Below, piece after piece: positions 425 to 32,569 of a DNA stretch of 36,437 nt. Every line of letters starts with the position of its first letter. Position 1 is the stretch's first letter. The position numbers and the translations under genes are program-made. The notes beneath the pieces were generated by a model, which searched no databases, was not told where the DNA came from, and worked only from the letters and a program-made list of their open reading frames with translations. Origin of the DNA: Octopus bimaculoides (Eukaryota); assembly GCF_001194135.2 (NCBI RefSeq), contig NC_068986.1, positions 64,136,098 to 64,172,534 of the forward strand, written 5' to 3'.

Positions 425-432
425 ATCTATAT

Positions 433-6932: not shown

Positions 6933-8155
6933 CTCCTCATTTAACACCCCTCATCCATACTGGCATGCGTTGGATGGTTTGAAAGGATTCAAGTTGCAGG
7001 GCTGCATTGTTCTCCTATGCAAATGCTTTGGCATGCTGTTGATGAGTGGATACCCTTCCTAACACCAATCACCTCACAGAATGTACTGAGTGCTTTTTCT
7101 TGAACCTGTACAAGTGAGATCACCTTGCAACTTGCCTAAAGTGGCCCTTATAACTAAAGGAGATTGATGAGAGGGTGAAGTATGAAGAGAGGAACCGGTT
7201 TATAGTCATGAATGTGATAGTGGAGAGAGCATTATAGGGGCAGAGAGTGTAGAAGGGATAAAGGAAAAGGAAGGGATTAGTGTCAGGTTAGTGAGAAAGG
7301 GATTTAAAGAATGGTGAAGGTGGCAAAGCAGTTGTGTAGAAGTGGTTCAGACAATTAAGAGTCTATTTCTAATATGTTCATAGTACACATTGCTCCACTG
7401 CATTTACTATATCTGTGATTCCACTATATCTCCTGTGTATTGATAGCTTATTGGGTACAGCACATGGAGTTTATACCTACTCCTTTCCTGCATATCAAGC
7501 AAGGCCATTTCCCTGATGATAACTGGAGTCTGTCTTCTTTCCTTGTCTATTAACACCTCAGTCTTAGCTTACTTTGAGAATACTTGGATTGTAGGTTTAG
7601 ATTCCATGCCTGAAATTTCTTCTAATTCCATTATAAATTAGCTATGTGAATTAGATAATTGACATATAAGAGTTCTTGTGGACAGCTGATCTTAAACTCA
7701 TTTGTGATGGTGAGAAGGACTATGTTGAACAGAAGAGCCTTGACAGTCCCCTACCTTCATATCAAATTCCTACTCAAACTCACTGTGGATTCTCACTGCA
7801 TCTTCATACACTGCTTAAACAACTCTCACAATCCATTTATCTACACCTAGTTTCTTCATGACCACCAAATTATTGAGTGCAACATTCGGTCAAACACTTT
7901 CTCTAAGTCGAAGAATGCTAAGGGTAGTGGTTTACTCTTAACCAAGTATTTCTCCTGCTGTTGTCTCACTAGGAAGATTGGATCTCTGTCAAACACAAAG
8001 CCAAAATACATCTAATCTAAGCTGACTATTTTGGATCATTTGTGTTATGATTTTCTCTCTGACCTTCATAACCTGCTCAAATAATTTGTTGTCTGTATAA
8101 CTTACTCTCACTAAGGGATCTCTTTTGTTCTTGTACTAGTTTACCATGACATTGC
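6931..8155 (-). mobile_element. Degraded 5'-truncated RTE LINE (RT domain plus 3' tail)
   Basis: Minus-strand translation of ~7640-8030 gives YFGFV...IFLVRQQQEKYLVKSKPLPLAFFDLEKVFDR...IIWWS*KKLGVDKWIVRVV...ELLY, a decayed RTE RT. The family 3' tail lies at 6931-7105 on the same strand. Confidence 0.8.
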
Positions 8156-11389: not shown

Positions 11390-11701
11390 CTTGTCTTGCA
11401 AGTTACTTGGTGACACTGCTGGTGCCATGTAAAAAGCATCCAGTCTACACTGCAAAGTGGTTGGCATTTGGAAGGGCGTCCAGCTGTAAAAACCATGCCA
11501 AAACTGACCTTGTCTGTGCCACATAAAAAGCACTCAGTCCACTCTGCAGGGTGGTTCATATTAGGAAGGGCATCCAGCTGTAGAATCCGTGCCAAAACAG
11601 GCACAGGAGCCTGGGGGTAGTCTTCTACAAGGCTGGCTCCTATCAAACCATCCAACCCATGCCAGCATGGAAAGCGGACATTAAACAATGATGATGATGA
11701 T
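11390..11701 (+). mobile_element. RTE 3' tail copy with internal duplication, plus strand
   Basis: Two ggaagggc.tccagctgta segments; ends ccaacccatgccagcatggaaagcggacattaaacaatgatgatgatgat. Confidence 0.82.
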
Positions 11702-11714
11702 ATATTATTATTAT

Positions 11715-13385: not shown

Positions 13386-15013
13386 TGTAAAGTCCATCTG
13401 TTTTTCTGCCTAATCAGTTTAACTGCCTGCCTATTTCTAGCTGTGTTTCTGTTTATCTATGTCAGCTTGGTTGTCTCTCAGTGCAACTGTGTCTTGTATG
13501 TCTGACTGGCCATATAATTCTGTGTGCGATTGTTTTTCTGCTTGCTTATTTGGATATGCTTCTGTAGCTCTTACATGTTTGTTTGCCTGTTGTATGTCTC
13601 TGTTACATACATGTGTGAAGTGGTCCATTTTGTTGGTGTGCATAACCTTTTTAAGGACATTGATTTTTAAACAAACATATTCAGACATTGTCAAACTATT
13701 TGGTGTCCAACCTCTGTATCCACAAATTAACTGATCTACACTTGATGTTATGTATGTGAATCCTCCCACATCTCCTCTCCTCCCTCCTCTCTTCAGTCTT
13801 CTCTTCCTTGTCTCTGTGGCTTGCATGCTTCTATGACACATTAAGCCAAATTTGATAAATTGCATGAAAAAAGACAATATCTAGATAGGCCTGATGAAAT
13901 ATGGTCATTCTGGGTGCCAGACTGTTTGAATAAAATTTCTGGGCAGGTTTATTGACGAAACAATTTTTTTTTCTTCAGAGTGAATAACACCTCTTCATAA
14001 TAGTATTCGAAATCAGTGAGGTGTATAATTTACTACTGGTGATGATGATGATTAGAAATTAGAGGAAATGTTTTTCAAAAATAAATAAATATTAAATGTC
14101 TTGTAAACTGCAATAAGCTATATATGGGATCCAGTTTCAGAAATAATTTCAGGAATAAAATGCCAGTCTATTATAGGTAATTTTTTTCCCTTTGACATGG
14201 TGACTATTTCAGATGAACCAAGGCAATGTAGAATAACACATCCTCAGAAACTCAGCAAAACACCCTCAATGGATTTGAACTGGTGATCCATAGGCAGGTA
14301 GTTAATAACTTATCCACTTGACTATTCTGCTTTTATGTTCTAGCTGCTAATTAAGGCAAGGTTAAAAGTTACCTCCTCTAACTAGTAAATAATTGAAATT
14401 CTTAATAAAATTTATTTGAAATATAGTAGAATGTATAGAAGAATGAAAGAATATTCCATAAAAACATTCTGATTTCTTTTTATTGTTCACATGGACAGCT
14501 GGAATATAAACTTGTCTTTAAAATGTCAGCTTGAAGTTGATCCTTAATAAATTGGCTCTAACTCTTTTGCATAGTCTGAATCTATAGTTCTTTTGTCGTA
14601 TGTAAAATATCATAGTGTATAGTGGTCAAGACATTTATTTCTCTAATGGTGAATTTACATAGCTCTAATTGCCTGCTGCTGCTGGCTACTATAGTGTACC
14701 ACTGTAATTAATGAGGTTTGTTAGCTTGCAGTAATAAATTCAATCCCACCCACTATCACAACAGGATTGGAAAACTGCAGTGGAAATCATACCATTCTCA
14801 TTCTTCTCAATCGTTAGTCAAAGATACCTTAGACACAGTAGGGTTACAAGGTTACAATGAGTGTTAGTTTGTTGAGAGGGGTAAGGTCTATAGCCTTTTT
14901 ATGGAATAATTAGGCATGGTTGTTAGGTAAAATCTGAAATTTGATTGAGCAACCTTACAGTCAGTGGTATGCTAAACATGACCATCTTGTCTTTCCAAGC
15001 AATTTATCTAGGA

Positions 15014-15231
15014 CAGTGTTTCTCAATCACTTTTTTTTATAAGATACTCCTTTTGATCTTGTAAAATTATCAAGAGTATTCCCTCCCCACTACAAAGCAA
15101 AGCAGTTGTTTTTTTCTCTCAGCATTTGTATTGGTCTTTAATATAAAGTGTTGATGGTCACAACCAGCACCACCCCAAATATTCTATAACACCCTCCAAG
15201 AGGGTACTACAGTCTCTTTTGAGGAACATAG
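15014..15231. mobile_element. Possible hAT/Charlie-type MITE relic
   Basis: Left end cagtgtttctcaa; degenerate right end tttgaggaacatag; no intact TSD. Confidence 0.35.
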
Positions 15232-15463
15232 ATTGAAGGTTGTTTTATTTAATGAGTTATTCCACTTTTAGAACAGTAGTGTGTGATTTAAGGGAGATTT
15301 GACTGCTGATGTTGGCAAGTTAAGCAACTCAGTTGGCTCATTGCCTTTATTGAGCAAGATTTATGTGGTTAGTATTTGTTTTGAATCTTCGAAGGTTTGT
15401 GGTTGTAAAAATGTTTTTAGAAGGTGGGTGGGGACCCCAGTTTTAATGGAAGATAGTATTTGA

Positions 15464-15897
15464 CCCTTTAGCATTCAAACCGGCCATATCTGGCCCAAAT
15501 ATGCTATCTGTTTTATGTTCAAACCAGCTAGATTCAGCCTCTCATACCTACCCTGCAATGTTATTCTAAAAATAAACAATTACACTGAAATCTTGAAGCT
15601 ATGAGGCAATGTATTGTTAATTTTAAAACAATGTGAATAAAGAAGCATTACATTTGATCTGAAGGCTCAAGGGTTAACCCTTCAGAATTTAAACTAGCCA
15701 TGTCTGACCAAATTATTCTACTTGTTTTATATTCAAACTGACCAGATCTGGCCTTTTATACCTACCCTAAAATGTCATTCTCAAAATAAACTATTACATC
15801 ATTTGAAATCTTGAATCTACGTGACAATGGGTGATTAATTCAAAATATGTGAATAAACATGCACTAAATTTGACAGAATAATCTGAATGCTAGAGGG
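15464..15897. mobile_element. Two head-to-tail TTAA-targeting (piggyBac-like) MITEs, 15464-15673 and 15678-15897
   Basis: Termini ccc...ggg with TIR consensus near ccctttagcattcag. Flanks ttga / ttaa / ctaa, the central TTAA (15674-15677) being shared. Internal sequences are clearly homologous. Confidence 0.72.
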
Positions 15898-16410
15898 CTA
15901 ATATAAAGCAGAATGGAGGCTAAGACAACAAGAGTTGATAGAAGGCAGAGAATTGTTATATCATGGTTAATAGAAGTCTTAAATTCTGAGTATGATCTAT
16001 GGCTTCTAACTAGAAAAATATTTGTCGAATTTTATAATGAAAATTTATAGGAAACACAAGTTAAATAACTTTGCAACTTAAAAAAAAAACTATTTACAAT
16101 TTTAATTATTTTTAAATATGTAAAAAATAAACAAGAATAGAAATATAAAATATTCACATTGTCCAATAAAGTCAACATCACGGTGGTGCACCAGCATGAC
16201 CGCAGCCACTTGGCTGAAACACATAAATAAAATAAATAAGTAGTTCAGATAACTAAATATATATAGAACTGCTGTTTGATTCACTTTAAAACTGGTAGTA
16301 TTTTGTTAAACATTTTTGTTTTGCATTTTTCAATGTTATACTTAGGCCTTTTGCTTTGTGACTGTCTTTTTGATTTAAATCTCTTAAATTTCTCACTATT
16401 TTTCCTGTTT

Positions 16411-16443
16411 AATCTAATAAAGTTTTGCTTCCTCATTTTTTAG
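16411..16443 (+). promoter_or_regulatory. 3' splice acceptor of a 5'-UTR intron immediately before the GTF3C1 start codon
   Basis: Branch-like ctaat (~16414), pyrimidine tract gttttgcttcctcattttt, then TAG|G (AG at 16442-16443), 9 nt before the ATG. The TAG is also an in-frame stop. Confidence 0.75.
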
Positions 16444-16452
16444 GTTTCCAAC

Positions 16453-19400
16453 ATGGCTGCTGACTTTGTTGGGGATCTGTTGGATGAAGTGGCTTTAGAA
16501 GGGTTAGATGGGACAACACTTAATACATTATGGATACGACTTAAAGACCGCCCAAACTTTGCTTTCAAAATAGACGATCAGTCTAAAGAATTTATCTGGA
16601 ATTCTTTAGTAATTCAAGATCAACTTCAGTTCTATGAACTCCCAACTGACCGCCTCCCACTTGTTACCATCAACCATTTTGATTACCAAGATCCTTCTAC
16701 AGGTCAGTGGATTGAAGCTGCCAAGATTGTCGACTGCTATCCTATTGAAGTAGTCAAAGATAACCCATGTGTCCAAGGTTCATGCTCCACTTATTCAACT
16801 CGATTAAATATCACAAATCAAATACGCTCAGATGATTACCAAAAGCTTTGTAGTCTAGAAGAAGCCGAAGCACTATGGGGCGAGAGAATGGTTATTGTTG
16901 CTTCCCAGAATTTACGGAGTATGTCTCTGTTTGGACCAGACAGAGACCCAAATATGAGGTTGTTGGATTTACCATATTGCATCTTAGAAAGAATTGGTCG
17001 TTCTCGTTATATTGGGGAACTCACCCGAGGACACAACAGTTTAGCTGTTTTTAGCGATTCGCCAAAACTTATGTTTCATTATTTTAAGTTACTAATCCGT
17101 TTATCACTTGTCCGTAAGCAAGTATTTGCTATGACCAATGTTGTAAATAAACAGGTCCACACTAGATTATTACATCTACCTCGATTTTACTCTGAAAAGA
17201 AATCTCGGTACATGGTTCTACTAGAACGCCTCACCAGCTACTTGAAGACCAAATACAGCCACCAAGAAGAGGTTGCTATTTGTAAGGAAGATATCGGGAT
17301 TGATGATCAGTCCTTCAAGAAGCTGTGTCGGGCTTCTACTAGATATGTGCGGATATTTAATATGAACTACAGAGATATGTATCCAGACTCAGAAGTTATT
17401 GAAAATGTGAAAAACAAAAAGTATAAGGAGAAAACAGTTCGTGTGATTCAAATGATGAGAGAGTATGGTGTCGAGGAAGATGAAGATGAAGAAGAAATAG
17501 AAAGTGACGAAGAGGGAGAAGATACTGCGACAGTGACTAAAGATGAAAAAAACAAATCAGAGCCTATAAAATTACTATGGGAAAGGCCATTTATCCAACA
17601 AGCAAATGATTTACTTGAATGTGCTGGTCCTGGGGGCATGTCTCTTAAAGATATGATGAAGTGTATGAATATTTCAACTTTTGAAAGCCGTAGTGTCCTG
17701 AAGTATTTGACTAGGACCAAAGCATCTCACTCAGTTATGTTAGATGTTGGCAGACAGCGTAAAGCTATGTATATCTCCTATAAATTCGCCAACACCAGTA
17801 AATTACATATGGATTTAGAAAAAGAAAGGAACAAAATGGAACAGTTGATAAAGTCAACTCCCAAACTTCCATTTAAATCTACACCCCAGCAGAAGGGATT
17901 AACATCTGAGGAGAAGAATAAAGAATCAGCCCCACACACTAATTCAAGTGGAACCAATCAACAAGATGCTACTGTTGATCCTGTAATGAATATGCAGGAA
18001 GAGGATGATACTAAAAAACCACGCCTCACTTCAAAGGTCCTTCAGCGGACCAACTGGATCATTGAAGCTGTTCAAGAAGCTAAATTAGTTGATAAGACAT
18101 TTGCTTTAAAGAATATGATTTTAAATAAAGAAAAAGCCATGGGCGAATCAACTCAAATTGACAAGAAATCTGTCGACCGTATCCTGCGACGTCTGCAAAA
18201 GAATGGACAAATCCGGTTAATAAAAACCATAATTAAAACTGATAATAAACAAAAAGAATTAACGTTCATTTGTGATCCCAGTATCACACCTGATCATCAA
18301 ATTGTGAAGAGTGCTATAGAACAAGCTAAACTGAAATATTTTGGGGTTTGCAAAGAGCATTTACGTGAATCTGAGCGTATGAAGATGAACAGCCGTTTGC
18401 TTATGAAAGATATGCCTCCTAGTGTCCAAGATAGTGTGCGCAAACTGCATGACCACCGAAGCAAGATGAAAGCATGTGATATGCGTTATGATCCATCATA
18501 TATGAGAAAGTATGGTGTCTTACCAAAGTTTCGTAAAGCTGAAACTGTCCACAAATTATTGTGGTACTTGATATATGCTAATAGAAACAAGACACCCATA
18601 CCAAATGACCAAATTCGTAAAGATCCTGCTTTGGAGGTGAAAGCTGACCCTGATAGTGACATCACTACTACCACAACTTACGATTCACCTCAGGCTCTTA
18701 TACCTGAGACTGATGTTGATGGTAATGTGGAGTGGAACATAAAATCAACTGAAAGTGTCCCTCCTGTGTATGTTGATGACAATTCATGGCGGCGTTATCT
18801 TGCTCCTTTGCCTCTACATTCTGGATTCCAGGTCGGCTGGTGTCTTATCAGTGACGTTTTGCTTTTGTTACCCCTACAGTTATTTTGTCAAATAGTCTCT
18901 CTTCCATACAAAATTAATGGTCTGAAAGAATTTCTTGCAGATCCTGTGAAACGCTACTATCCTATAACTTACCTGCCTTTTAAACTTACCCAGCAACTCC
19001 TCTATGCTCGTCGTTACATATTTACGTTTTATGAAGTTTGTACATTACTCTGTCAAATGGGGTTACTCTCATTTGGAGATCAAGTCCTCAAAGAGAAAGA
19101 CCAAGTGTTTATTTACCTTCACAAAAATGCTAAACTGGTTGATACGAAAAGTTCTGTTGTTGGCTACTGTCAGGTTCGCCCACCTGAAGGACAAACATTT
19201 CCAATTGAATCCTTTCATTTAGATAGCTGGGAAGTTCTTGAAAATTATTGGTTCTGTTTTAGAGTCACTGCATTGAATACTCCATTAGGAAGATATCACA
19301 AAGTGGTTGATGAAGTAAAATGGGAAGAAGAACATGGTGTAGCCCCAGTCTCTTATAGTTTGTCTGATGCTCAATCTGCAAAGACACCGGATACAGTTAT

Positions 19401-22400
19401 TGACAATGGTGCCATACCTGGTGATGGATTAGGTGCTGCCGGCTTCGACTCTTCTCTATTTTGCCATATCTCTCGGAATTGGTTTTGGTATGCTGAGACC
19501 AGTCAATGGAAGAATATTGTTAAAGAAAAAAGAGTAGATAAAAAATCTAGTGATGTAATATCGCCCTTACATCCAACTATCTTTGAAGAGAATTCTCTTA
19601 GCCAGAGACTTCCTCGACTTTTTGGACCAAAAAGGAGACTGGCGCTTGATAAAAATGATGAGGCTGCTGAAACTTTTGGGAAAAAGAATGCATCTGAAAA
19701 CCCAAATGACAAAGAAGGAAAATCAAAATTTCCTTTGTCAAAAATTCCCAAACCCAAAAAACGGAAATTATTTGGTTATTTGAACAAAGGATTAAAAAAG
19801 AAAGCTCGTAAACGTACTGAGATTTATGATGAACGAGATAAATTAGCTTTAAAAAGTAAGACCAAGGAAAGAGTTGTTTGGTCACAGCAGGAAGACAGCT
19901 TTTTGCTTCTCTGTAAAGTTGCCAATCTTTTCATGGAAAATAGAAGACCTAATGTACTTAGTCGTATGATTGTTTCTTGGACCAAGATTCGAGATTTACT
20001 TATGGATAAATATCCAGAGTATGCTAAAGATAAAACATCAAAAGCATGTCAGCGAAGAGTATCATTTGTTCTGAAGAATCCTCAAACAGTCCTTAATGTT
20101 TCTGCATTTCTACAAGAAGCGTTGCATGACTCCAAACTTATGGAAGATTTCGGTTACAGGAGATTTAAATATGTACAGGATGATGAAACTGACAAAATAT
20201 TTGAGGATCTAGTAAACCGATTAATTGAGAAATTTTCTTCAGATAAATACACACAGAGATGTGATCTTCCAAATTCTTTGAATCAGCTTAACAATAACTA
20301 CATTTTAACCCAAATTGGTAAATGGAAGAAAGTCTCTGAACCTAAAGATATTACTCGAGTGGATGATATCTATGCTACAGTCTTGCATAATATTATACAC
20401 AGTTATCTATCATTGAATGATAAACAAGGCAGAGCCCATGAAATGTTCCGTTTATTTAACCAGTATCCAGAGAGCTTAATGAATGAAGTATTTGCACAAA
20501 TGCAGTCAGATCGTATGATCACTCGAGTTAAGAGAAAAGTAATTAAAAACAAACAGAAAGAGGCAGACCTTTCTTCCTTAAATACTCATCAACTGAGCCA
20601 AAAATACAATTATTATTTTATTAGTAGGTTTCCTCCTAATTTATTTTCTGACATCTTTGAGATGGTTGATTTGGTGGAATCTGCTTCAACTGAAGGTTAC
20701 AATGTGTCTGATGTACCAAAAGGGGGATATGCAGCTTTTATAGTTTCAATCGTTGGCCTTCAATTAGCTAAGTTTGATGTAACAATACCTGATAAAATTA
20801 TTGTCCTTGATCCTGAGGGATTGAAATCAAATCCTATTGGTCGAGGGAAAGTTCCAAAGACAAATGAACCTGAAGATGATTCTGTTGCTGAAGGAGATCT
20901 CCAAGTTTCCGAGAATTCTCCAAAGTCTCCTGCAAATGAATCTTCTACAGAATGTGAAAGTGTTTCTCAAGAAATCCAACAGAGTGGGCAGAAGAGGCCA
21001 CGGGAAGACAGTATAAACAAAGATTCTTTAACAGATGATGATTCTGGACCTAGTGCACCAAAAAGCAAGCCAATCCCTTCCAACACATCAAAACCTTTGG
21101 TAATCAGACCTCATCATTTGCCCAGGAAAACAAATGCTAGAGTTTCTCGTGTGACTCTGTCCCTTGCCCGATCTGAAAATATCACAGGTTTGAACCTGCG
21201 TGAATTAAACCCACAAGATAACTTTGTAATCAACAGTTGTGTTGTTAAAATAAGTCTTCTTAATTCTTTGTTACCTAAATTTCATGGTAATACTGAAAAA
21301 GATGTTTTACTTGTGGAGTCTGCATCGTCATCAGGGGACATTTTATGGATCACCGAAAAAGTCTTTAAGAACATTATAAGGAAACAATATCAGTTAGTAC
21401 CACAGCCAGAAGAAGTGTCTACAATTTGGGATAATCTTCGAAAGCAGACTAATATGTCAGCTCGTGATATTGGTCTCCTACAGCAAATATTGAGTGTTAT
21501 CGAAAGAGAGCAAAGCATGGGAATCCGAAAATATGATCTCCAGTATCATTTCCAAAATCGGTGGTTACAAGTCAAAAAGTGTGTGAATGTCCTTGAAAAA
21601 CATCAACTGATCCTAAAAGTCGGTGTCACAGTAGAACGCTATGTTTCTGTCAAATATTCACGTCCATGGATTATACATGCATTTAAAAATACTCGTGGCC
21701 GATCAGATCAGAACAATATTGATGATTGCTTCTCTGATTTACTCTCCAGCCCAGAAGAGGAATACACCAAATCTTTCACATCTCTTGATGAATCAAATAT
21801 TGCAGATTCTGGTGCATCAGCTTGTGATGCTGCTTTAAATGCATTGAAACAACTTGAAGCTGAATGCAATTCCAATTGCACACTTAACCTTAGCTATCAG
21901 TCAACACCGTCATGTAGTTCAAACAGCAGTACATTTGGGTTGCCTAGCAACAACCGAATACCAGCTTGTACCTCTCAACCTCCAGAACAAGAATATGACA
22001 ATGGTGAAGATGATGATGTCATTTTACTTGAAAATCCAAGCACAGCAGGTAATTTTTCAATGAGTAAGCGAGTTAAGAAGAAACCTGCCAGACTAGCATT
22101 GAATGAAGATGCTTCTTGTACAGCACCTTCATTGAGTACATACAAAAAAGTGCGTGTACTCTGCCGTCCATGGAGAAAGCCTGAAGGTTTGCTCAATAGA
22201 AATGTATTAAAGATGATGCTTGAATCACTTATGTTTTTCATCATGTCCAAGCCTGGAGTGTCTGAAGAAACAATTTTTGCCAAGTACAATCCTGTTTTGC
22301 AGCCAGTACCCGTTAAGGAACTATTGGGACTTTTGGAAGATATTGGTTGTGTCTCAAAGACTATATTGAGGAAACCAAGGTGGATCTCAGTATTTAGCAA

Positions 22401-22530
22401 AACAAATTCCATTGAGGAAGTTGAAGAAGACCACGAAGGAGATGTTATTATGTATGATGTAACTTTGGAAGGGACTTTACGAATGGGACAATTCATGAGT
22501 CATTTGATGTCATCCAAAGTGTCACATTAA
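16453..22530 (+). CDS. GTF3C1: General transcription factor 3C polypeptide 1 (TFIIIC220/tau138 ortholog, B-box-binding subunit); single-exon CDS, 2025 aa
   Basis: Uninterrupted 2025-codon ORF with good start context (caacATGG). The N-terminus LLDEVALEGLDG, the segments QGSC, IVASQ..R..LFG, YCILERIGRSR..GEL (B-block binding domain, ~16975-17187) and DVGRQR, and the C-terminal RPWR..EG.LN...M.E...F.IMSKPG...VLQPV...ELL..LE..GC all match my recollection of human GTF3C1. Confidence 0.95.
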   Translation: MAADFVGDLLDEVALEGLDGTTLNTLWIRLKDRPNFAFKIDDQSKEFIWNSLVIQDQLQFYELPTDRLPLVTINHFDYQDPSTGQWIEAAKIVDCYPIEVVKDNPCVQGSCSTYSTRLNITNQIRSDDYQKLCSLEEAEALWGERMVIVASQNLRSMSLFGPDRDPNMRLLDLPYCILERIGRSRYIGELTRGHNSLAVFSDSPKLMFHYFKLLIRLSLVRKQVFAMTNVVNKQVHTRLLHLPRFYSEKKSRYMVLLERLTSYLKTKYSHQEEVAICKEDIGIDDQSFKKLCRASTRYVRIFNMNYRDMYPDSEVIENVKNKKYKEKTVRVIQMMREYGVEEDEDEEEIESDEEGEDTATVTKDEKNKSEPIKLLWERPFIQQANDLLECAGPGGMSLKDMMKCMNISTFESRSVLKYLTRTKASHSVMLDVGRQRKAMYISYKFANTSKLHMDLEKERNKMEQLIKSTPKLPFKSTPQQKGLTSEEKNKESAPHTNSSGTNQQDATVDPVMNMQEEDDTKKPRLTSKVLQRTNWIIEAVQEAKLVDKTFALKNMILNKEKAMGESTQIDKKSVDRILRRLQKNGQIRLIKTIIKTDNKQKELTFICDPSITPDHQIVKSAIEQAKLKYFGVCKEHLRESERMKMNSRLLMKDMPPSVQDSVRKLHDHRSKMKACDMRYDPSYMRKYGVLPKFRKAETVHKLLWYLIYANRNKTPIPNDQIRKDPALEVKADPDSDITTTTTYDSPQALIPETDVDGNVEWNIKSTESVPPVYVDDNSWRRYLAPLPLHSGFQVGWCLISDVLLLLPLQLFCQIVSLPYKINGLKEFLADPVKRYYPITYLPFKLTQQLLYARRYIFTFYEVCTLLCQMGLLSFGDQVLKEKDQVFIYLHKNAKLVDTKSSVVGYCQVRPPEGQTFPIESFHLDSWEVLENYWFCFRVTALNTPLGRYHKVVDEVKWEEEHGVAPVSYSLSDAQSAKTPDTVIDNGAIPGDGLGAAGFDSSLFCHISRNWFWYAETSQWKNIVKEKRVDKKSSDVISPLHPTIFEENSLSQRLPRLFGPKRRLALDKNDEAAETFGKKNASENPNDKEGKSKFPLSKIPKPKKRKLFGYLNKGLKKKARKRTEIYDERDKLALKSKTKERVVWSQQEDSFLLLCKVANLFMENRRPNVLSRMIVSWTKIRDLLMDKYPEYAKDKTSKACQRRVSFVLKNPQTVLNVSAFLQEALHDSKLMEDFGYRRFKYVQDDETDKIFEDLVNRLIEKFSSDKYTQRCDLPNSLNQLNNNYILTQIGKWKKVSEPKDITRVDDIYATVLHNIIHSYLSLNDKQGRAHEMFRLFNQYPESLMNEVFAQMQSDRMITRVKRKVIKNKQKEADLSSLNTHQLSQKYNYYFISRFPPNLFSDIFEMVDLVESASTEGYNVSDVPKGGYAAFIVSIVGLQLAKFDVTIPDKIIVLDPEGLKSNPIGRGKVPKTNEPEDDSVAEGDLQVSENSPKSPANESSTECESVSQEIQQSGQKRPREDSINKDSLTDDDSGPSAPKSKPIPSNTSKPLVIRPHHLPRKTNARVSRVTLSLARSENITGLNLRELNPQDNFVINSCVVKISLLNSLLPKFHGNTEKDVLLVESASSSGDILWITEKVFKNIIRKQYQLVPQPEEVSTIWDNLRKQTNMSARDIGLLQQILSVIEREQSMGIRKYDLQYHFQNRWLQVKKCVNVLEKHQLILKVGVTVERYVSVKYSRPWIIHAFKNTRGRSDQNNIDDCFSDLLSSPEEEYTKSFTSLDESNIADSGASACDAALNALKQLEAECNSNCTLNLSYQSTPSCSSNSSTFGLPSNNRIPACTSQPPEQEYDNGEDDDVILLENPSTAGNFSMSKRVKKKPARLALNEDASCTAPSLSTYKKVRVLCRPWRKPEGLLNRNVLKMMLESLMFFIMSKPGVSEETIFAKYNPVLQPVPVKELLGLLEDIGCVSKTILRKPRWISVFSKTNSIEEVEEDHEGDVIMYDVTLEGTLRMGQFMSHLMSSKVSH

Positions 22531-22913
22531 TCTGTTACATAACTGATGACAGATTTCTATTTTTACCTCAATTCCATATGGTCCAAAAGAACTTCCCCAC
22601 TCCCCATTAAAAAAAAATGGAATTAAAAAAATATAAAAAAGAGAACCTCATTTGCTGCATTACTCCAATTTTTGGATTTACACAAAAGAAAAAGAAAAGA
22701 AAAAAAGTAATCTTCACTTGTTTTTGTCCATTATTTCATAAGAAAAGAATCTTGTAGTTTTTAGGACCTGGTTTCTATGTATGCATGGCCTGACATATGT
22801 GGAAACAATACACCACAGTGGAAATACACAATTTTTCCTCAATTTCAAATCATTTCATTAACTTGTGACTCATCTGTGTATCAATATATAATTATTTAGA
22901 TCATAAAACAGTA

Positions 22914-22919
22914 AATAAA
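22914..22919 (+). terminator. Probable polyadenylation signal of GTF3C1
   Basis: AATAAA about 385 nt after the stop codon, followed by a T-rich downstream tract (ttgttttcatttttttt). Confidence 0.45.
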
Positions 22920-23883
22920 AGCACTTGTTTCATTTTTTTTAATTACTCAAAAACAATTATTTTATTTATCTGTCAGCAGTTAATGTATTCACAGTTTAAT
23001 ATTTGCTTTCGTTTCCGTTGATGTCTTGTATTTTGTCATGTATAGTATGCTGTGGCATATGTCATTGAGGTAACTCTAATTCTATAGCTGAATCTTAATG
23101 ATTCGTCTTCTCCAAACTCAATGCTGTAAACCAATAGAACCCTCATAAATTATACAGTACCCTCATGTTAACTCCTGACCAGTTCTGATTGACCATGCCT
23201 ATGATCAAATAGTGTTCCAATCATGGCTATTCTGTACGTTAGGAACTACAATATCTTTAAGTTGGTAGAGAATTATTTGAGGGATATTTCTTTATTATTA
23301 CTTGCAAGTTGAATAATTGTGTAGAGACTCCCTTTGCTTCACTTTGGTGCCAAATTAAAGCTAGGTTCATTGCACTAGCAAGAAATGAATATCTAACCTA
23401 TGGACACAGTTCATTGTCTGAAGAAATTTAAGTGGTTTAATAATTACCCTTTAAGAATTCAACCAGATTAAGACTAAGACTGTAACTGAATTGAATTTCA
23501 GTGTCAGATTTATGTTAGATTTGTGTGGTTGCTCTTTTTAATCATCAGCATCATCAATGTTTTGAAGTTTATTTTTAATGCTAACAAAAGTTCAGTAAGT
23601 TTATGTAGTTCTGTGTGTTTCAGTCAGACATCATCTTGTTAGTGAGGCCTAAACTTGTTAACTTTTCTTAATTTTCTAATAAAATTTTCCTTAGATCTGT
23701 ATCACCTGAGTCAAATCTGTTTAGCTTCTTAATACCAACTGCCTGAGATTACCCATCATCATAGGATCCATTTTTTTCCAATGCTTTCATGAGTCAGATG
23801 GAATTCTGTCAGATAGATTTTTTTGCTGCCAGATGCCCTTCTAATCACCATTTGCTTCTGAATAAGGTAATATTTCTCTATAG

Positions 23884-24897: not shown

Positions 24898-26367
24898 GTG
24901 AATCCCTAAAACTCGAGAACTACGCAACCAATTTCATTCAAATTTTACACATGCCTTACTTAGGGTTCCAGTTGTGTTTTAGTAAAAAAAAATTATTAAC
25001 TTCTTGCAGAGTTCGAGCACACGGCAACATAATATCTCCTCCACTATTACGTGTCAAAAGTGAAACAAAAACACTCATGTCAAATACTTTCACTTTAAAA
25101 ATGAAACTATTCCACTAACTGAAACAATCACATTTCGATACTGTAGTGACAGATACTTTCACAGAGAGAGAAAGAGAAAGAGAGAGAGAGAGAGATGNNN
25201 NNNNNNNNNNNNNNNNNNNNNNNNNNNNNNNNNNNNNNNNNNNNNNNNNNNNNNNNNNNNNNNNNNNNNNNNNNNNNNNNNNNNNNNNNNNNNNNNNNNN
25301 NNNNNNNNNNNNNNNNNNNNNNNNNNNNNNNNNNNNNNNNNNNNNNNNNNNNNNNNNNNNNNNNNNNNNNNNNNNNNNNNNNNNNNNNNNNNNNNNNNNN
25401 NNNNNNNNNNNNNNNNNNNNNNNNNNNNNNNNNNNNNNNNNNNNNNNNNNNNNNNNNNNNNNNNNNNNNNNNNNNNNNNNNNNNNNNNNNNNNNNNNNNN
25501 NNNNNNNNNNNNNNNNNNNNNNNNNNNNNNNNNNNNNNNNNNNNNNNNNNNNNNNNNNNNNNNNNNNNNNNNNNNNNNNNNNNNNNNNNNNNNNNNNNNN
25601 NNNNNNNNNNNNNNNNNNNNNNNNNNNNNNNNNNNNNNNNNNNNNNNNNNNNNNNNNNNNNNNNNNNNNNNNNNNNNNNNNNNNNNNNNNNNNNNNNNNN
25701 NNNNNNNNNNNNNNNNNNNNNNNNNNNNNNNNNNNNNNNNNNNNNNNNNNNNNNNNNNNNNNNNNNNNNNNNNNNNNNNNNNNNNNNNNNNNNNNNNNNN
25801 NNNNNNNNNNNNNNNNNNNNNNNNNNNNNNNNNNNNNNNNNNNNNNNNNNNNNNNNNNNNNNNNNNNNNNNNNNNNNNNNNNNNNNNNNNNNNNNNNNNN
25901 NNNNNNNNNNNNNNNNNNNNNNNNNNNNNNNNNNNNNNNNNNNNNNNNNNNNNNNNNNNNNNNNNNNNNNNNNNNNNNNNNNNNNNNNNNNNNNNNNNNN
26001 NNNNNNNNNNNNNNNNNNNNNNNNNNNNNNNNNNNNNNNNNNNNNNNNNNNNNNNNNNNNNNNNNNNNNNNNNNNNNNNNNNNNNNNNNNNNAAAACCTA
26101 TTTGTATATGCTCCACAAGGGAAAACAAGGAACATAGTTTACAATGAGGTGTTATAATCACAACAGCAAGAAAGTATGTACATGATCACCTTCTTTTACG
26201 AAACTTCATTGACTTTCATATATTTATATTGATATACATATATATACGTGTGTTTGGGTGCGTGTGTGTATATACATCTCTATATATAAAGATGATGCGT
26301 AGTCTAGACGGCGTTTTTAGATTTCATTATTCTCTTTAACCCGGGCAACGCCGGGTATTTCTGCTAG
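24839..26367 (+). mobile_element. Helitron 1 (defective; spans a gap)
   Basis: 5' A|TCtatatatataaaaatgag at 24839. Helicase C-terminal codons NLFVYAPQGKTRNIVYNEVL* at 26095-26157. 3' hairpin acccgg-gcaacg-ccgggt (26339-26356), then CTAG|T (26364-26367). Confidence 0.88.
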
Positions 26368-27545: not shown

Positions 27546-30084
27546 CTAGCAGTATAATCTGATGTCTGGATGTAACTTATTACGCCATCTACAATAAATC
27601 TTGCTAGGTGAAAATCAACTAAAAAAGAAAGCCTTACAATGAAAAAACCCTTATGATGTAAATATGTTCATAATTCAAAAGACGAAATTAATAGGGAAAG
27701 TCTGAAGGCTGTTTTGAGTAACATTATTAAGTGTATGTAAATTTCTTCCGTCTAATTGGCTATACAAATGCTTGTGCAAAACAACTTTTTGCGCTGCCTT
27801 GATTACATAGCAGGGTAATTCCTTTTAGCAGGAGGTAGGACGGCAATTTGTGATGAAGCAATTGCTGGTGATCTGTTGCTACACAGTTCTGCCAGAATTC
27901 TATCAGATTGGGCAGTAGATGTTGATGCACCATTTTGCATTATATTCAAAGTAGCTTCTGGAATGTGGTGAATTGCTGCAGTCTGTTGCTGTCTTTTTAA
28001 ACCTGTTGCTTTCTTTCCCCAGCAAGCTCTCTTGTTTGGAGGCATAATCCATGTACATATTAAACAGAACAAAAAAAGTTATAACAGATGGCAGGGTCGG
28101 TAGTTTTCACATTTCGGTAATTTTTCAGATTAACACCCGCACGATTACGTAACCCTAACCTTGACCCTAAAACCGTAACACTAACGCTCATTGTAACCCT
28201 AAAAACCGTAACCCTAACACTAGTGAAAACCGTGCCGGTGTTAATCTGAAAAGTTACCCACATTTGTAATGAAGTTCACTGATTTGCAATGTGTTGTCCA
28301 TAAGCTCCGTAGTTTGTATATTTACAAAACATGAGTTATCTTGTAGTGAATGCTTGTGTGTACGTGCGCGTGTATGCGTTTGAGAGACCGAGAGAGGGGA
28401 GGAAAGGAATAGAGAACGGGAGCAATGAAGAAAGAGAGGAAGGGAGAACGGAAGACAGTTATAAAATAGCAATGCATGCGCATGTTTATATAAGAAACAC
28501 AGAAACTAAATCTTATATCTATAATGTTGATGTGTTTATGTGTATGTTGTCACAGATCACGTATGTGTGGTTGTGTGTGTTTTTACGTTTCTATGTTATG
28601 AAAAATATGTTAGAGGTAGAGGGATACAAGAAAGCTATTAAATGGGAGAGAAGAAGAACGAAGTGAGAGTGAAAACGTAGAAGGAAAGAATAGTCTTAAA
28701 GCAAGTTAATCTATGACTTTCTCTCTCTCTCCTTCTTTTACTCTTACTCTGTATATTATATGTTGAGCGCGTGGTCGATGTGTAAGAACGCCGGTACAGG
28801 TAGAAGGGAAGAAATATAAAAGTTGCTAGAAACAACAGCCAAATCTCCCTTAAATCACACAAAGTAAATGGAATTTTAAAAAATGTAATTACTGCACTGG
28901 AAAGTTCACATCAAGAAAATTCCATTGATGTAAAAATTTGTACAAAAAAGTGGAAGATGTGGATTTCTATAAACTTTTAAAAAGGCTTCACACAGATACA
29001 GAACTTCAGCATTATATATTAAGATGGGCAACACACACACACACACAGAGAAAATCTGCCTTTTATAGATAAGATTACTTGAAGCCTTTGACGAAATAGA
29101 GGGGGACATAGCTTCACACGATGTAGAAGACAACTGGAGGTTTCTANNNNNNNNNNNNNNNNNNNNNNNNNNNNNNNNNNNNNNNNNNNNNNNNNNNNNN
29201 NNNNNNNNNNNNNNNNNNNNNNNNNNNNNNNNNNNNNNNNNNNNNNNNNNNNNNNNNNNNNNNNNNNNNNNNNNNNNNNNNNNNNNNNNNNNNNNNNNNN
29301 NNNNNNNNNNNNNNNNNNNNNNNNNNNNNNNNNNNNNNNNNNNNNNNNNNNNNNNNNNNNNNNNNNNNNNNNNNNNNNNNNNNNNNNNNNNNNNNNNNNN
29401 NNNNNNNNNNNNNNNNNNNNNNNNNNNNNNNNNNNNNNNNNNNNNNNNNNNNNNNNNNNNNNNNNNNNNNNNNNNNNNNNNNNNNNNNNNNNNNNNNNNN
29501 NNNNNNNNNNNNNNNNNNNNNNNNNNNNNNNNNNNNNNNNNNNNNNNNNNNNNNNNNNNNNNNNNNNNNNNNNNNNNNNNNNNNNNNNNNNNNNNNNNNN
29601 NNNNNNNNNNNNNNNNNNNNNNNNNNNNNNNNNNNNNNNNNNNNNNNNNNNNNNNNNNNNNNNNNNNNNNNNNNNNNNNNNNNNNNNNNNNNNNNNNNNN
29701 NNNNNNNNNNNNNNNNNNNNNNNNNNNNNNNNNNNTATATATATGGGCAACACACACACACACACTAAATTAAAAAATGTTAGTAAGTAAAAGTGTTTTA
29801 AAAAAGATTGTTAAATTTTCAGATTAATACCCGCACGATTTTCACTACATTGTTAGAGTTAATAGATTTTATTAGGGGGGAAAATGTTTATTTGTGTAGT
29901 TTTATGGATTTTATTCGTTATTAGGAGTTATTTTGACTGAAAAAATGACGCAGTAACCTAACTAATTGTATTTAGAATATTAATTCTGATTCTTTAATCC
30001 AAGAAATTTGGAATTGTGTAAATGTATGAATTTTAAACATACACACACACACACACAGAGAAAATCTGCCTTTTATAGATAAGA
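27546..30084 (-). mobile_element. Helitron 2 (non-autonomous) inserted in the RTE LINE
   Basis: Plus-strand junctions gacttA|CTAG (27546) and ataaGA|Ttacttgaagcc (30084; duplicated at 29074) equal minus-strand A|TC...CTAG|T. Removal restores gac tta tta ctt gaa gcc (DLLLEA). The sense-strand ORF MPPNKRACWGKK resembles the RepHel N-terminus. Confidence 0.85.
28116..28258. mobile_element. 143-bp MITE with 28-bp TIRs, a degenerate (CCCTAA)n core and a probable 8-bp TSD
   Basis: Left ggtaatttttcagattaacacccgcacg; right cgtgccggtgttaatctgaaaagttacc. Flanks cacatttc (28108-28115) / cacatttg (28259-28266). A partial second copy lies near 29812-29850. Confidence 0.85.
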
Positions 30085-32569
30085 TTACTTGAAGCCTTTG
30101 ACGAAATAGAGGGGGACATAGCTTCACACGATGTAGAAGACAACTGGAGGTTTCTACGGGACAACCTACTCAGGGCCACTGACCAGATCTGTGAATGGTG
30201 CAAAGTCCTCTCTTGACCAAAAATAACGTGGTGGTGGAACAATGTTGTTGACATGGCTACTAGACAAAAGAAACAGGCTTGGAAGAACGGAATTGTATCA
30301 GACTGCCAGAAGAGAGGCTAGGCCAGACGGGAAGCGGATGAGAAAAAAATTGCCAATGTTCTGTGCCATGAGGACCAAAGACTTGAGGTATTTCGTGTTG
30401 CAAGACAGTGTGTGAGAGAGAATCGTGATGTCGTGGGAGAGAAATGTGTTCACATAGATGATGGTACACTTGCACTAAATGAGGCTGCAAAGAAAGAGGT
30501 TTGGAGACGCCACTACAAAAGATTACTCAATAAAGAGAATGAATGGGAGAAAGAGAGTCTGCCGTATGTCGACATAACAGAGGGACCAGCTATCCGAGTT
30601 GACAGTACCATGGTAGTTAAAGCAATTAAGAGTATGAAGACAGGGAAAGCCCTGGGCCCATCAGGAATCACTGCAGAGATGCTCAAAATATCTGGCAGTG
30701 TCGGCTATAGCCTAGTCACCCGTATTGTTAACCAGGTGATACACGAAAGAGTCATACCCAATGACTGGTGTAGCAGCACCATAGTCAACTGCTACAAAGG
30801 TAAAGGTGACATTTCAGTTACAAATAATTACAGAGGTATCAAGTTGTTAGATCAGGTAATGAAAGTCACGGAGAGGGTCATAGCCCAACTAATTAGGGAG
30901 CGAGTCAGTTTAGATGAGATGCAGTTTGGGTTCGTGCCATGGAAAAGCACCACTGATGNNNNNNNNNNNNNNNNNNNNNNNNNNNNNNNNNNNNNNNNNN
31001 NNNNNNNNNNNNNNNNNNNNNNNNNNNNNNNNNNNNNNNNNNNNNNNNNNNNNNNNNNNNNNNNNNNNNNNNNNNNNNNNNNNNNNNNNNNNNNNNNNNN
31101 NNNNNNNNNNNNNNNNNNNNNNNNNNNNNNNNNNNNNNNNNNNNNNNNNNNNNNNNNNNNNNNNNNNNNNNNNNNNNNNNNNNNNNNNNNNNNNNNNNNN
31201 NNNNNNNNNNNNNNNNNNNNNNNNNNNNNNNNNNNNNNNNNNNNNNNNNNNNNNNNNNNNNNNNNNNNNNNNNNNNNNNNNNNNNNNNNNNNNNNNNNNN
31301 NNNNNNNNNNNNNNNNNNNNNNNNNNNNNNNNNNNNNNNNNNNNNNNNNNNNNNNNNNNNNNNNNNNNNNNNNNNNNNNNNNNNNNNNNNNNNNNNNNNN
31401 NNNNNNNNNNNNNNNNNNNNNNNNNNNNNNNNNNNNNNNNNNNNNNNNNNNNNNNNNNNNNNNNNNNNNNNNNNNNNNNNNNNNNNNNNNNNNNNNNNNN
31501 NNNNNNNNNNNNNNNNNNNNNNNNNNNNNNNNNNNNNNNNNNNNNNNNNNNNNNNNNNNNNNNNNNNNNNNNNNNNNNNNNNNNNNNNNNNNNNNNNNNN
31601 NNNNNNNNNNNNNNNNNNNNNNNNNNNNNNNNNNNNNNNNNNNNNNNNNNNNNNNNNNNNNNNNNNNNNNNNNNNNNNNNNNNNNNNNNNNNNNNNNNNN
31701 NNNNNNNNNNNNNNNNNNNNNNNNNNNNNNNNNNNNNNNNNNNNNNNNNNNNNNNNNNNNNNNNNNNNNNNNNNNNNNNNNNNNNNNNNNNNNNNNNNNN
31801 NNNNNNNNNNNNNNNNNNNNNNNNNNNNNNNNNNNNNNNNNNNNNNNNNNNNNNNNNNNNNNNNNNNNNNNNNNNNNNNNNNNNNNNNNNNNNNNNNNNN
31901 NNNNNNNNNNNNNNNNNNNNNNNNNNNNNNNNNNNNNNNNNNNNNNNNNNGAAGACCTGTTGAGGCAAGTAAATTTGAAATCGAAATCGAACCAAATTCG
32001 ACGACTGGCACCCATGCCAACCTCTCCTTCATTGGACACTAAACTCTGCTTACGAAGACCTGTTGGGGCAAGTGAAATCGAAATAGTAATTGAACCATAT
32101 TCGATGACTGGCACCTGTGCCAGTGGAGCACTAACAGCACTGTCCGAGCATGATCATTGCTAGAGCAGCTGTCTGGCTTCCGTGCTAGTGGCCCGTAAAT
32201 AGCACCATTTGAGCGTGATCGTTACTAGCGTTGCCTTATTGGCACTTGTGCCAGTGGCACGTTAGAAAATCATTCGAGTGAGGTCGTTGCCAGTGTCGCT
32301 GGACTGGCTCCTGTGCAGGTGGCATGTAAAAAACACCATTTTGCGCGTGGCTGTTGCCTGTACCGTGTGACTGGCCCCTGTGCCGGTTGCACGTAAAAGC
32401 ACCCACTACACTCTTGGAGTGGTTGGCGTTAGGAAGGGCATCAAGCTGTAGAAACTCTGCCAAATCAGATTGGAGCCTGGTGCAGTCATCCGGTTCACCA
32501 GTCCTCAGTCAAATCGTCCAACCCATACTAGCATGGAAAGTGGATGTTAAACGATGATGATGATGATGA

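What the first reader, a model, noticed from the sequence alone, without database searches (positions are those of the whole stretch)
16411..22920. Intronless full-length GTF3C1 with only a 5'-UTR intron: candidate retrogene that replaced the parental TFIIIC subunit
Seen: 6,078 bp of coding sequence with no intron, stop or TE, in a region otherwise saturated with TEs, plus a strong splice acceptor 9 nt before the ATG. A-rich tracts after the stop (attaaaaaaaaa ~22606; aaaagaaaaagaaaagaaaaaaag ~22683) could be poly(A) relics, but this is weak. Established: vertebrate GTF3C1 is split by many introns, and LINE RT can retropose mRNAs. Inference: the intact ORF is a functional retrocopy that recruited an upstream exon and promoter, or the product of whole-gene cDNA-mediated intron loss, in an essential Pol III factor.
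Basis: partly seen in the sequence, partly recalled or inferred. Interest (0 to 1): 0.75.

Follow-up and report, generated by a model that had tools for sequence, protein, structure and literature searches.

The report
Intronless GTF3C1 gene of coleoid cephalopods
The octopus gene for the largest subunit of the RNA polymerase III factor TFIIIC has its whole 6-kb coding region in one exon. Cuttlefish and argonaut share this layout, whereas scallop, ark clam, abalone and priapulid genes have introns, so an ancestor of octopuses and cuttlefish lost about 35 introns at once, most likely through a reverse-transcribed mRNA.

Summary
Window 16453-22530 (+) is one 2025-codon ORF encoding a full-length GTF3C1 (TFIIIC220) orthologue. 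The source is Octopus bimaculoides chromosome CM046606.1. An acceptor lies 9 nt before the ATG.

The intronless coding region is not specific to this octopus. It is also one exon in O. vulgaris, Argonauta hians and the cuttlefish Sepia pharaonis. Scallop orthologues have about 32-36 coding exons over 35-68 kb. Ark clam, abalone and priapulid orthologues also have introns. The state is therefore derived and arose no later than the last common ancestor of octopuses and cuttlefish.

The gene is under strong purifying selection (dN/dS 0.07-0.10). No second cephalopod GTF3C1 appears in the protein collections searched.

Spliced cuttlefish RNA contigs prove the 5'UTR intron, with the acceptor at the same -9 position. 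The A-rich tracts lie inside a conserved 3'UTR that ends at AATAAA 22914-22919, so they are not poly(A) relics. No target-site duplication is detectable.

A one-step cDNA-mediated loss of all coding introns is well supported. Whether it happened in place or by retroposition and loss of the parent is unresolved. Scallops seem to have a 5'UTR intron 19 nt before the ATG, which leans slightly towards loss in place. This is a new member of a known kind, of moderate interest.

The parts
14169..14297 (+). Candidate non-coding first exon or promoter-proximal block. The putative donor is CAG|GTAGTT at 14297/14298. The TSS is unknown.
   Evidence: This is the only upstream block conserved with Argonauta (L002 8863-9018, 72% identity). 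It aligns with the 3' end and GT donor of the RNA-verified first exon of Sepia (L005 4992-5023). This is an inference: no Octopus spliced read was available, and the region has low CpG o/e.
14298..16443 (+). 5'UTR intron. The 3' end is firm; the 5' end depends on which upstream exon is used.
   Evidence: The acceptor (polypyrimidine tract plus AG at 16442-16443) is at the identical position, 9 nt before the ATG, in Argonauta and Sepia. In Sepia, two independent RNA contigs (L003, L006) join a site 4.97 kb upstream directly to this position with GT..AG boundaries. The O. vulgaris gene model also splices into it.
7311..7322 (+). Homologue of the 12-nt first coding exon used in the O. vulgaris annotation (ATGGTGAAGGTG). 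It is a possible alternative upstream exon.
   Evidence: The O. vulgaris protein CAI9723773 begins MVKVVSN + MAADF. Its exon at L014 10001-10012 is followed by a GT donor. The orthologous O. bimaculoides site has GC at 7323-7324. O. sinensis has three RefSeq protein accessions with the same protein sequence, which may reflect alternative 5'UTRs.
16444..16452 (+). 9 nt of 5'UTR at the start of the large exon.
   Evidence: The sequence is gtttccaac in Octopus and Argonauta and gtttcccac in Sepia.
16453..22530 (+). Uninterrupted GTF3C1 coding sequence: 2025 codons plus TAA.
   Evidence: Pfam domains map to 16477-16920 (WH_GTF3C1_N), 16966-17196 (B-block_TFIIIC) and 18022-18336 (eWH_GTF3C1). dN/dS is 0.097 against Argonauta and 0.072 against another Octopus.
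22531..22928 (+). 3'UTR with both A-rich tracts. The poly(A) signal AATAAA is at 22914-22919 and the probable cleavage site is near 22928.
   Evidence: Similarity to Argonauta runs to 22921 and then stops. The Octopus contig L012 ends at 22928. There is no A-run after the site and no flanking direct repeat beyond chance.

Best explanation
This is the single, functional GTF3C1 (TFIIIC220, B-box-binding subunit of the Pol III factor TFIIIC) gene of coleoid cephalopods. All of its roughly 35 ancestral coding introns were removed precisely and together, through a reverse-transcribed, spliced mRNA. This happened on the lineage leading to the common ancestor of octopuses and cuttlefish.

The gene is now transcribed from one or more short non-coding upstream exons. 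These are spliced across a 1-9 kb 5'UTR intron to an acceptor 9 nt before the ATG. Transcription ends about 400 nt after the stop codon.

Of the two cDNA routes, I slightly favour recombination or gene conversion of the resident gene with its own cDNA. That route keeps the ancestral promoter, the very short first exon and the 5'UTR intron, because a first exon of about 30 nt offers too little homology for the intron to be converted away. The other route, a retrocopy at a new locus followed by loss of the parent, remains nearly as likely.

Shown: the intronless state, its phylogenetic distribution, the intron-rich outgroups, purifying selection, and the 5'UTR splice in Sepia. Inferred: the single event, the cDNA intermediate, the route, and the donor exon in O. 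bimaculoides.
For: - **Identity.** Three Pfam GTF3C1 domains are found. The alignment to human GTF3C1 is colinear along the full length, E = 2.8e-229.
- **One coding exon in independent assemblies.** O. bimaculoides; O. vulgaris, colinear at 97.8% over 7 kb; Argonauta hians, 6036 bp for 2011 aa; Sepia pharaonis, 6129 bp for 2042 aa.
- **Outgroups have introns.**
  - Pecten maximus: 36 tblastn segments over 68 kb.
  - Mizuhopecten: at least 32 segments over 35 kb.
  - Tegillarca.
  - Haliotis: the gene range is far longer than the CDS.
  - Priapulus.
  - The first coding intron, after ALEGLDG, is shared by scallops and Priapulus and is absent in coleoids.
- **Removal was precise.** 14 of 27 well-defined scallop exon junctions fall in gap-free Octopus alignment.
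- **Function.** dN/dS is 0.07-0.10.
- **Single copy.** No second cephalopod-like cluster appears among 5.8 billion or 1.8 billion proteins. The next hits are at most 39% identical over full length. The two closer fragments are from Tegillarca and Priapulus.
- **5'UTR intron.** Spliced Sepia RNA contigs prove it, and the acceptor is conserved.
- **Lean towards loss in place.** Both scallops have a polypyrimidine-AG 19 nt before the ATG, with conserved sequence after it. They also share a conserved non-coding block 0.3-1.4 kb upstream. This suggests that a 5'UTR intron next to the ATG is ancestral.
Against: - No Nautilus, squid or vampire squid genome could be examined. The event is therefore dated only as 'before the octopus-cuttlefish split and after the split from bivalves and gastropods'. 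Stepwise loss along that long branch cannot be excluded.
- The route is unresolved. Microsynteny could not be tested (10-kb flanks only, and neighbours differ even between scallop and abalone).
- No promoter motifs are shared between scallops and coleoids.
- The scallop 5'UTR intron is inferred from sequence only, and Priapulus shows no such acceptor.
- Retrogenes commonly acquire new upstream exons (PMC4772013). Partly processed transcripts can also carry a 5'UTR intron. A 5'UTR intron therefore does not by itself exclude retroposition.
- Absence of a paralogue was tested in protein sets, not in whole genomes.
Confidence: 0.8

Rival explanations
1. Classical retrogene replacement ('orphan retrogene'). 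A fully processed GTF3C1 mRNA was retroposed by LINE machinery into a new locus in a coleoid ancestor. It recruited an upstream exon and promoter, creating the 5'UTR intron, and the intron-bearing parent was then lost. This is a sub-route of the best explanation and its main competitor on mechanism. The confidence given is the share I assign to this route.
For: - All coding introns are lost, exactly as expected for a processed copy.
- A new 5' non-coding exon spliced in just upstream of the retrocopy is the commonest way retrogenes become multi-exonic (PMC4772013).
- A close precedent exists in amphioxus SYCP1: a single 3.2-kb coding exon, non-coding 5' exons and a lost parent (PMC5803294).
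- No promoter similarity to scallops was found.
- The immediate neighbours in Sepia (RtcB-like and GT22 models) differ from those in scallop and abalone.
Against: - There is no poly(A) remnant after the poly(A) site and no target-site duplication. After more than 200 million years this is expected either way.
- Scallops appear to have a 5'UTR intron at nearly the same place, so the exon need not have been recruited.
- A full-length retrocopy of more than 6.5 kb is unusually long.
- Microsynteny is not conserved among non-cephalopod molluscs either, so differing neighbours carry little weight.
Confidence: 0.4
2. A recent, octopus-specific retrocopy whose intron-bearing parent still exists and carries the function. 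This is the implicit 'young retrogene with poly(A) relics' reading.
For: Only the A-rich tracts after the stop codon.
Against: - Argonauta and Sepia have the same intronless structure and the same acceptor.
- The A-tracts lie inside the conserved 3'UTR.
- dN/dS is about 0.1.
- No other cephalopod GTF3C1 is found in protein collections that include annotated proteins from O. bimaculoides, O. sinensis, O. vulgaris, A. hians and S. pharaonis.
Confidence: 0.02
3. The intronless gene is the ancestral molluscan or lophotrochozoan state, and the introns elsewhere are gains.
For: None found.
Against: Scallops, ark clam, abalone and a priapulid all have introns. At least one intron position (after ALEGLDG) is shared between scallops and the ecdysozoan Priapulus. 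From general knowledge, vertebrate genes are also multi-exonic.
Confidence: 0.01
4. Stepwise loss of about 35 introns by many independent events along the long stem branch of coleoids.
For: The stem branch is long, and no intermediate taxon could be examined.
Against: It requires about 35 independent precise deletions in one gene while the one intron outside the coding region is spared. A single cDNA-mediated event explains both facts. From general knowledge, other coleoid genes keep typical intron-rich structures.
Confidence: 0.07
5. Assembly artefact: cDNA contamination or a mis-assembled transcript.
For: The window contains five assembly gaps.
Against: The same structure, with colinear non-coding flanks, is present in four independent genome assemblies from three genera. 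No gap lies within 16444-22928.
Confidence: 0.005

Closest known systems
GTF3C1 / TFIIIC220 (human; yeast Tfc3/tau138 family), the B-box-binding largest subunit of TFIIIC
   Same: The domain set is the same (N-terminal winged helix, B-block-binding domain, extended winged helix). The alignment to the human protein of PDB 8cli is colinear along the full length. The protein length is similar (2025 aa against 2109 aa for the chimpanzee/human-type orthologue).
   Different: Identity to vertebrate and bivalve orthologues is only about 31-33%. The coding region is a single exon, against about 32-36 coding exons in scallops.
Retrogene replacement / 'orphan' retrogenes (e.g. amphioxus SYCP1, PMC5803294; human orphan retrogenes, PMC3548309 and PMC4772013)
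   Same: A multi-exon, single-copy, conserved gene is represented by one large coding exon. There are non-coding 5' exon(s) and a 5'UTR intron. No parental copy is detectable, and the gene is under purifying selection.
   Different: A change of genomic location, which is the feature that defines a retrogene, could not be shown. No poly(A) tail or target-site duplication is left. At 6.1 kb of CDS it would be much longer than typical retrocopies. Scallops probably have a 5'UTR intron already.
Reverse-transcriptase-mediated intron loss by recombination of a cDNA with the resident gene (the Fink model; recalled from general knowledge, not read here)
   Same: Many adjacent introns were removed precisely and simultaneously. 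The 5'-most intron is the only one kept. Promoter and function would be kept, consistent with an essential single-copy gene.
   Different: Textbook cases usually remove a few 3' introns. Here every coding intron (about 35) is gone. In-place origin is inferred, not shown.
Rodent preproinsulin I gene (retroposed from a partly processed transcript that kept the 5'UTR intron; recalled from general knowledge, not read here)
   Same: A functional copy that lacks the coding-region intron(s) but retains an intron in the 5'UTR.
   Different: In rodents the parent (Ins2) persists, and flanking repeats and a poly(A) remnant are visible. Neither is the case here.

Membership tests
GTF3C1 / TFIIIC220 orthologue | N-terminal winged-helix, B-block-binding and extended winged-helix domains in the canonical order | tested here: met
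   Pfam PF23704 (aa 9-156), PF04182 (aa 172-248) and PF24101 (aa 524-628) all score above their curated cut-offs.
GTF3C1 / TFIIIC220 orthologue | Full-length colinear similarity to an experimentally characterised GTF3C1 | tested here: met
   Human GTF3C1 (8cli_A): E = 2.8e-229, with four colinear stretches covering query 5-2018. All top database hits are named GTF3C1.
GTF3C1 / TFIIIC220 orthologue | Binds the B-box of tRNA-type Pol III promoters within TFIIIC | not testable with these tools
   Biochemical property; inferred from orthology only.
Processed retrogene / orphan retrogene | Lacks the introns of the parental or orthologous gene | tested here: met
   There is one coding exon, against 32-36 in scallops. 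Junctions are precisely joined.
Processed retrogene / orphan retrogene | Lies at a locus unrelated to that of the parental gene | tested here: inconclusive
   Only 10-kb flanks were available. Neighbours differ between Sepia, scallop and abalone, but also among the outgroups themselves. The Sepia RtcB neighbour model is dubious.
Processed retrogene / orphan retrogene | Poly(A) tract directly after the copied 3'UTR | tested here: not met
   There is no A-run after the poly(A) site at about 22928. The A-rich tracts are internal to the conserved 3'UTR. Erosion over this time span is expected, so this is weak evidence.
Processed retrogene / orphan retrogene | Flanking target-site duplications | tested here: not met
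   The longest shared word between the flanks is 9 nt, typical of shuffled controls. Erosion is expected here too.
Processed retrogene / orphan retrogene | Parental gene absent (orphan) and the copy under purifying selection | tested here: met
   No second cephalopod GTF3C1 cluster is found. dN/dS is 0.07-0.10. Whole-genome tBLASTn for decayed parental exons was not possible.
In-place RT-mediated intron loss | Precise loss of adjacent introns with the 5'-most intron retained | tested here: met
   All coding introns are absent. The single remaining intron is in the 5'UTR, 9 nt before the ATG.
In-place RT-mediated intron loss | The retained intron, first exon and promoter are homologous to those of intron-bearing orthologues | tested here: inconclusive
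   Scallops have a conserved polypyrimidine-AG 19 nt before the ATG and a conserved upstream non-coding block. There is no transcript proof and no sequence or motif similarity to coleoid exon 1. Priapulus lacks such an acceptor.
In-place RT-mediated intron loss | Conserved genomic position relative to intron-bearing orthologues | not testable with these tools
   This needs chromosome-scale synteny or linkage-group comparison with Nautilus and bivalves.

The most novel reading that the evidence does not exclude
The intronless GTF3C1 is one visible product of a burst of reverse-transcriptase activity on the coleoid stem lineage. That burst would have replaced, or stripped the introns from, several essential multi-exon housekeeping genes at the time the coleoid genome was reorganised. 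GTF3C1 would then be a clean shared derived marker of Coleoidea and an entry point to a genome-wide class of cDNA-converted genes.
Probability: 0.1. Interest if true: 0.6.

Novelty: new member of a known kind. Interest (0 to 1): 0.4.

Why it matters
GTF3C1 is an essential, single-copy Pol III factor gene that is intron-rich in the other animals examined. Losing about 35 introns at once from a 6-kb coding region is an unusually large and clean example of cDNA-mediated gene restructuring.

The state is shared by octopods and cuttlefish. It is therefore a discrete, essentially irreversible genomic character that could help date events on the cephalopod tree, once Nautilus, vampire squid and squids are checked.

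It also offers a test case for telling retrogene replacement from in-place cDNA conversion, because one non-coding intron survived. It does not reveal a new mechanism. The gene is already annotated as GTF3C1 in public records. No paper in the searched library mentions GTF3C1 together with 'intronless'.

Tried and rejected
- **Poly(A) relics.** Rejected. The A-rich tracts lie within a 3'UTR conserved with Argonauta.
- **Target-site duplications.** The longest shared word between the 5' and 3' flanks is 9 nt, as in shuffled controls.
- **Synteny.** A human RTCB probe (sequence recalled from memory) found nothing in the window or in the Argonauta, Sepia or O. vulgaris loci. The Sepia 'RtcB' neighbour model begins with a 3-nt exon and is unreliable. 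Neighbours in scallop (Mito_carr, CARD) and abalone (DUF1751) differ from each other, so 10-kb microsynteny is uninformative.
- **Octopus contigs L008-L012.** They are colinear with the genome through the intron. They give no splice junction, and I could not establish whether they are RNA or DNA. Their run accessions appear in no searchable paper.
- **Promoter search.** No E2F or YY1-like motifs are shared between the scallop block and the coleoid exon-1 regions. There is no CpG-rich region in the 16 kb upstream.
- **Short-segment protein search for fragmentary paralogues.** It returned nothing, not even the query protein itself. I treat this as a tool failure, not as evidence.
- **Scallop transcripts to prove the -19 acceptor.** None are in the collection. 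The Mya arenaria locus is not on record.
- **tRNA and Rfam scans of the window.** Both were empty.
- **Literature.** 'GTF3C1 + intronless' gave no papers. The 'cephalopod + retrogene' and 'octopus + intron loss' searches turned up nothing on this gene.
Full report
**What is there.** The window is from Octopus bimaculoides, assembly GCA_001194135.2, chromosome CM046606.1 near 64.15 Mb. It contains one real long ORF, 16453-22530 on the + strand, of 2025 codons. The other 'long ORFs' at 25-32 kb run through assembly gaps of N. The protein carries the three Pfam domains of GTF3C1 in order: WH_GTF3C1_N, B-block_TFIIIC and eWH_GTF3C1. It aligns colinearly with human GTF3C1 of PDB entry 8cli along its full length, E = 2.8e-229. 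Identity to non-cephalopod orthologues is about 31-33%.

**Distribution of the intronless state.** In each of the following genomes the gene range for the exact protein equals the CDS length:
- Argonauta hians: 6036 bp for 2011 aa.
- The cuttlefish Sepia (Acanthosepion) pharaonis: 6129 bp for 2042 aa.
- O. vulgaris: colinear with the window at 97.8% over 7 kb.

The outgroup orthologues all have introns:
- Pecten maximus: 68 kb in 36 tblastn segments.
- Mizuhopecten yessoensis: 35 kb in at least 32 segments.
- The ark clam Tegillarca granosa: interrupted.
- The abalone Haliotis rufescens: a gene range far longer than its CDS.
- Priapulus caudatus: intron-bearing.

The first coding intron, right after the motif ALEGLDG, is at the same position in both scallops and in Priapulus. 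Coleoids lack it. Fourteen of 27 well-defined scallop exon junctions fall in alignment stretches where the Octopus protein has no gap within 8 residues, so removal was precise. The intronless coding region is therefore derived. It arose after the cephalopod lineage separated from bivalves and gastropods, and before octopods and cuttlefish diverged. It is not a recent feature of this genome.

**Function and copy number.** Nei-Gojobori dN/dS is 0.097 between O. bimaculoides and Argonauta, and 0.072 against a second Octopus species. Synonymous sites are saturated against Sepia. Cephalopod GTF3C1 forms three 90%-identity clusters: Octopus, Argonauta and Sepia-like. Next come bivalves at about 33%. 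In the 50%-identity library, scored exhaustively, only one representative is cephalopod-like. The best other full-length hits are at most 39% identical. The two closer fragments are from Tegillarca and Priapulus. No intron-bearing paralogue is visible. Unannotated decayed remnants could not be searched for.

**The ends of the gene.** Two independent Sepia RNA contigs (L003, L006) start with 30 nt that map 4.97 kb upstream in the Sepia genome. They then continue exactly at the AG|GTTTCCCAC-ATG acceptor, with GT..AG boundaries. The acceptor sequence and its position, -9, are conserved in Octopus and Argonauta. The 5'UTR intron is therefore real and as old as the intronless coding region.

The Octopus donor exon is inferred, with two candidates:
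- The only upstream block conserved with Argonauta is 14169-14322. It aligns with the Sepia first exon and has a donor CAG|GTAGTT at 14297/14298.
- The O. vulgaris annotation uses a 12-nt exon 8.4 kb upstream, which gives the N-terminus MVKVVSN-MAADF. Its homologue in the window is 7311-7322. There the donor is GC rather than GT.

O. sinensis has three RefSeq protein accessions with the same protein sequence, which may reflect alternative 5'UTRs.

At the 3' end, similarity to Argonauta continues for about 390 nt after the stop and ends at AATAAA (22914-22919). An Octopus contig ends at 22928. Nothing A-rich follows the poly(A) site, and the flanks share no direct repeat beyond chance. No retroposition hallmark survives, as expected for so old an event.

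**Mechanism.** About 35 introns were removed precisely and together from the coding region, and the only intron spared lies in the 5'UTR. This points to a spliced-mRNA/cDNA intermediate. Two routes fit.

- **(a) Retrogene replacement.** A processed copy lands elsewhere, recruits an upstream exon and promoter, and the parent is lost. The pattern is well documented. Amphioxus SYCP1 is a close precedent (PMC5803294). Most multi-exonic mammalian retrogenes gained exons upstream, and 'orphan' retrogenes replace their parents (PMC4772013; PMC3548309).
- **(b) In-place conversion.** The resident gene recombines with its own cDNA, which keeps the promoter and the 5'-most intron.

One new piece of evidence bears on this choice. 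In both scallops a strong polypyrimidine-AG lies 19 nt before the ATG. Conservation begins at that point. A conserved non-coding block lies 0.3 kb upstream in Pecten and 1.4 kb upstream in Mizuhopecten. This suggests that a 5'UTR intron next to the ATG is ancestral in molluscs. If so, the coleoid intron is more simply read as retained than as recruited. A first exon of only about 30 nt would also explain why that intron escaped conversion.

The lean is weak, for four reasons:
- The scallop intron is not transcript-proven.
- Priapulus shows no such acceptor.
- No promoter motifs are shared between scallops and coleoids.
- A retrocopy with a short 5'UTR would also tend to acquire an acceptor close to its ATG, and a partly processed transcript could carry the intron along, as in rodent insulin I (from general knowledge).

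I put about 0.8 on 'ancient one-step cDNA-mediated intron loss in the sole functional orthologue'. Within it I weight the routes roughly evenly, with a slight preference for (b).

**Rejected readings.**
- A young retrogene with a living parent is excluded.
- Ancestral intronlessness is excluded.
- An assembly artefact is excluded because four independent assemblies show the same structure with colinear flanks.
- Stepwise loss cannot be excluded without intermediate taxa, but it is unparsimonious.

**Novelty and interest.** The gene is already annotated as GTF3C1 in public records. Its structure seems not to have been discussed: no paper has GTF3C1 together with 'intronless'. It is a new and unusually large member of a known class (orphan retrogene or RT-mediated intron loss), not a new kind of system. 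Its value is as a clean rare genomic change for cephalopod phylogeny, and as a test case for separating the two cDNA routes. Interest is 0.4.

**Limits.**
- No squid, vampire squid or Nautilus genome was reachable.
- Look-ups of flanking DNA were limited to 10 kb and are now exhausted.
- The donor exon and TSS in O. bimaculoides, and the scallop 5'UTR intron, are inferences from conservation, not from reads.

Noticed in passing
window 671-940, 3664-4093, 25198-26092, 29147-29735, 30959-31950: Five assembly gaps (runs of N, 3176 bases in all). They explain the very low 'GC' values and the spurious long ORFs listed at 25115-26161, 28906-29765 and 30412-32163.
   Followed up: yes
window 34203-34820 (+), with adjacent ORF 33458-34216: Fragment of a Pif1-type helicase (Pfam Pif1_2B_dom E = 3e-10; PIF1 E = 3.6e-5). 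It is most likely a decayed Helitron-like element downstream of the gene.
   Followed up: partly
window 258-432, 472-669, 11516-11705, 32304-32577; also 13214-13388/24223-24391, 15460-15657/15674-15873, 3133-3638/26940-27451: Several families of dispersed repeats lie in both flanks. The first family also occurs in many copies and both orientations around the O. vulgaris and Argonauta loci. None lies inside the transcribed large exon 16444-22928. No tRNA-like or Rfam match was found.
   Followed up: partly
window 28001-28900: A stretch with near-normal CpG content (observed/expected 1.0-1.27), against a window median of 0.30. It could be an unmethylated promoter or a young insertion. No Pfam hit was found in the ORF at 28331-28666.
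   Followed up: no
window 5614-6012 (+): An ORF with a marginal Pfam match to the group II intron maturase domain (Intron_maturas2, E = 5e-5, 23.7 bits). It is probably a decayed retroelement or a chance match. The neighbouring frames show no reverse-transcriptase ORF.
   Followed up: partly
window 7311-7324; L014 10001-10014: The O. vulgaris gene model starts translation in a 12-nt upstream exon (ATGGTGAAAGTG|gt), adding MVKVVSN to the protein. In O. bimaculoides the same site has a GC donor. The conserved N-terminus MAADF... (compare scallop MDTDF...) suggests that 16453 is the true start.
   Followed up: partly
L005 7295-7297 (Sepia pharaonis locus): The annotated RtcB-family gene next to Sepia GTF3C1 begins with an exon consisting only of ATG followed by GT. 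Its range overlaps the GTF3C1 first exon on the other strand. It is probably an annotation artefact, so it was not used for synteny.
   Followed up: partly
L004 2546-2676 and L013 8463-8594 (scallop loci): A conserved non-coding block lies upstream of scallop GTF3C1. It has E2F-like (TTTCGCGCG) and YY1-like (AAAATGGCGCC) motifs and CpG o/e of about 1.3. It is a likely core promoter plus first exon.
   Followed up: partly
window 21975-22496 (-): A 173-aa antisense ORF inside the GTF3C1 coding region, with no Pfam match. I regard it as a chance ORF.
   Followed up: yes
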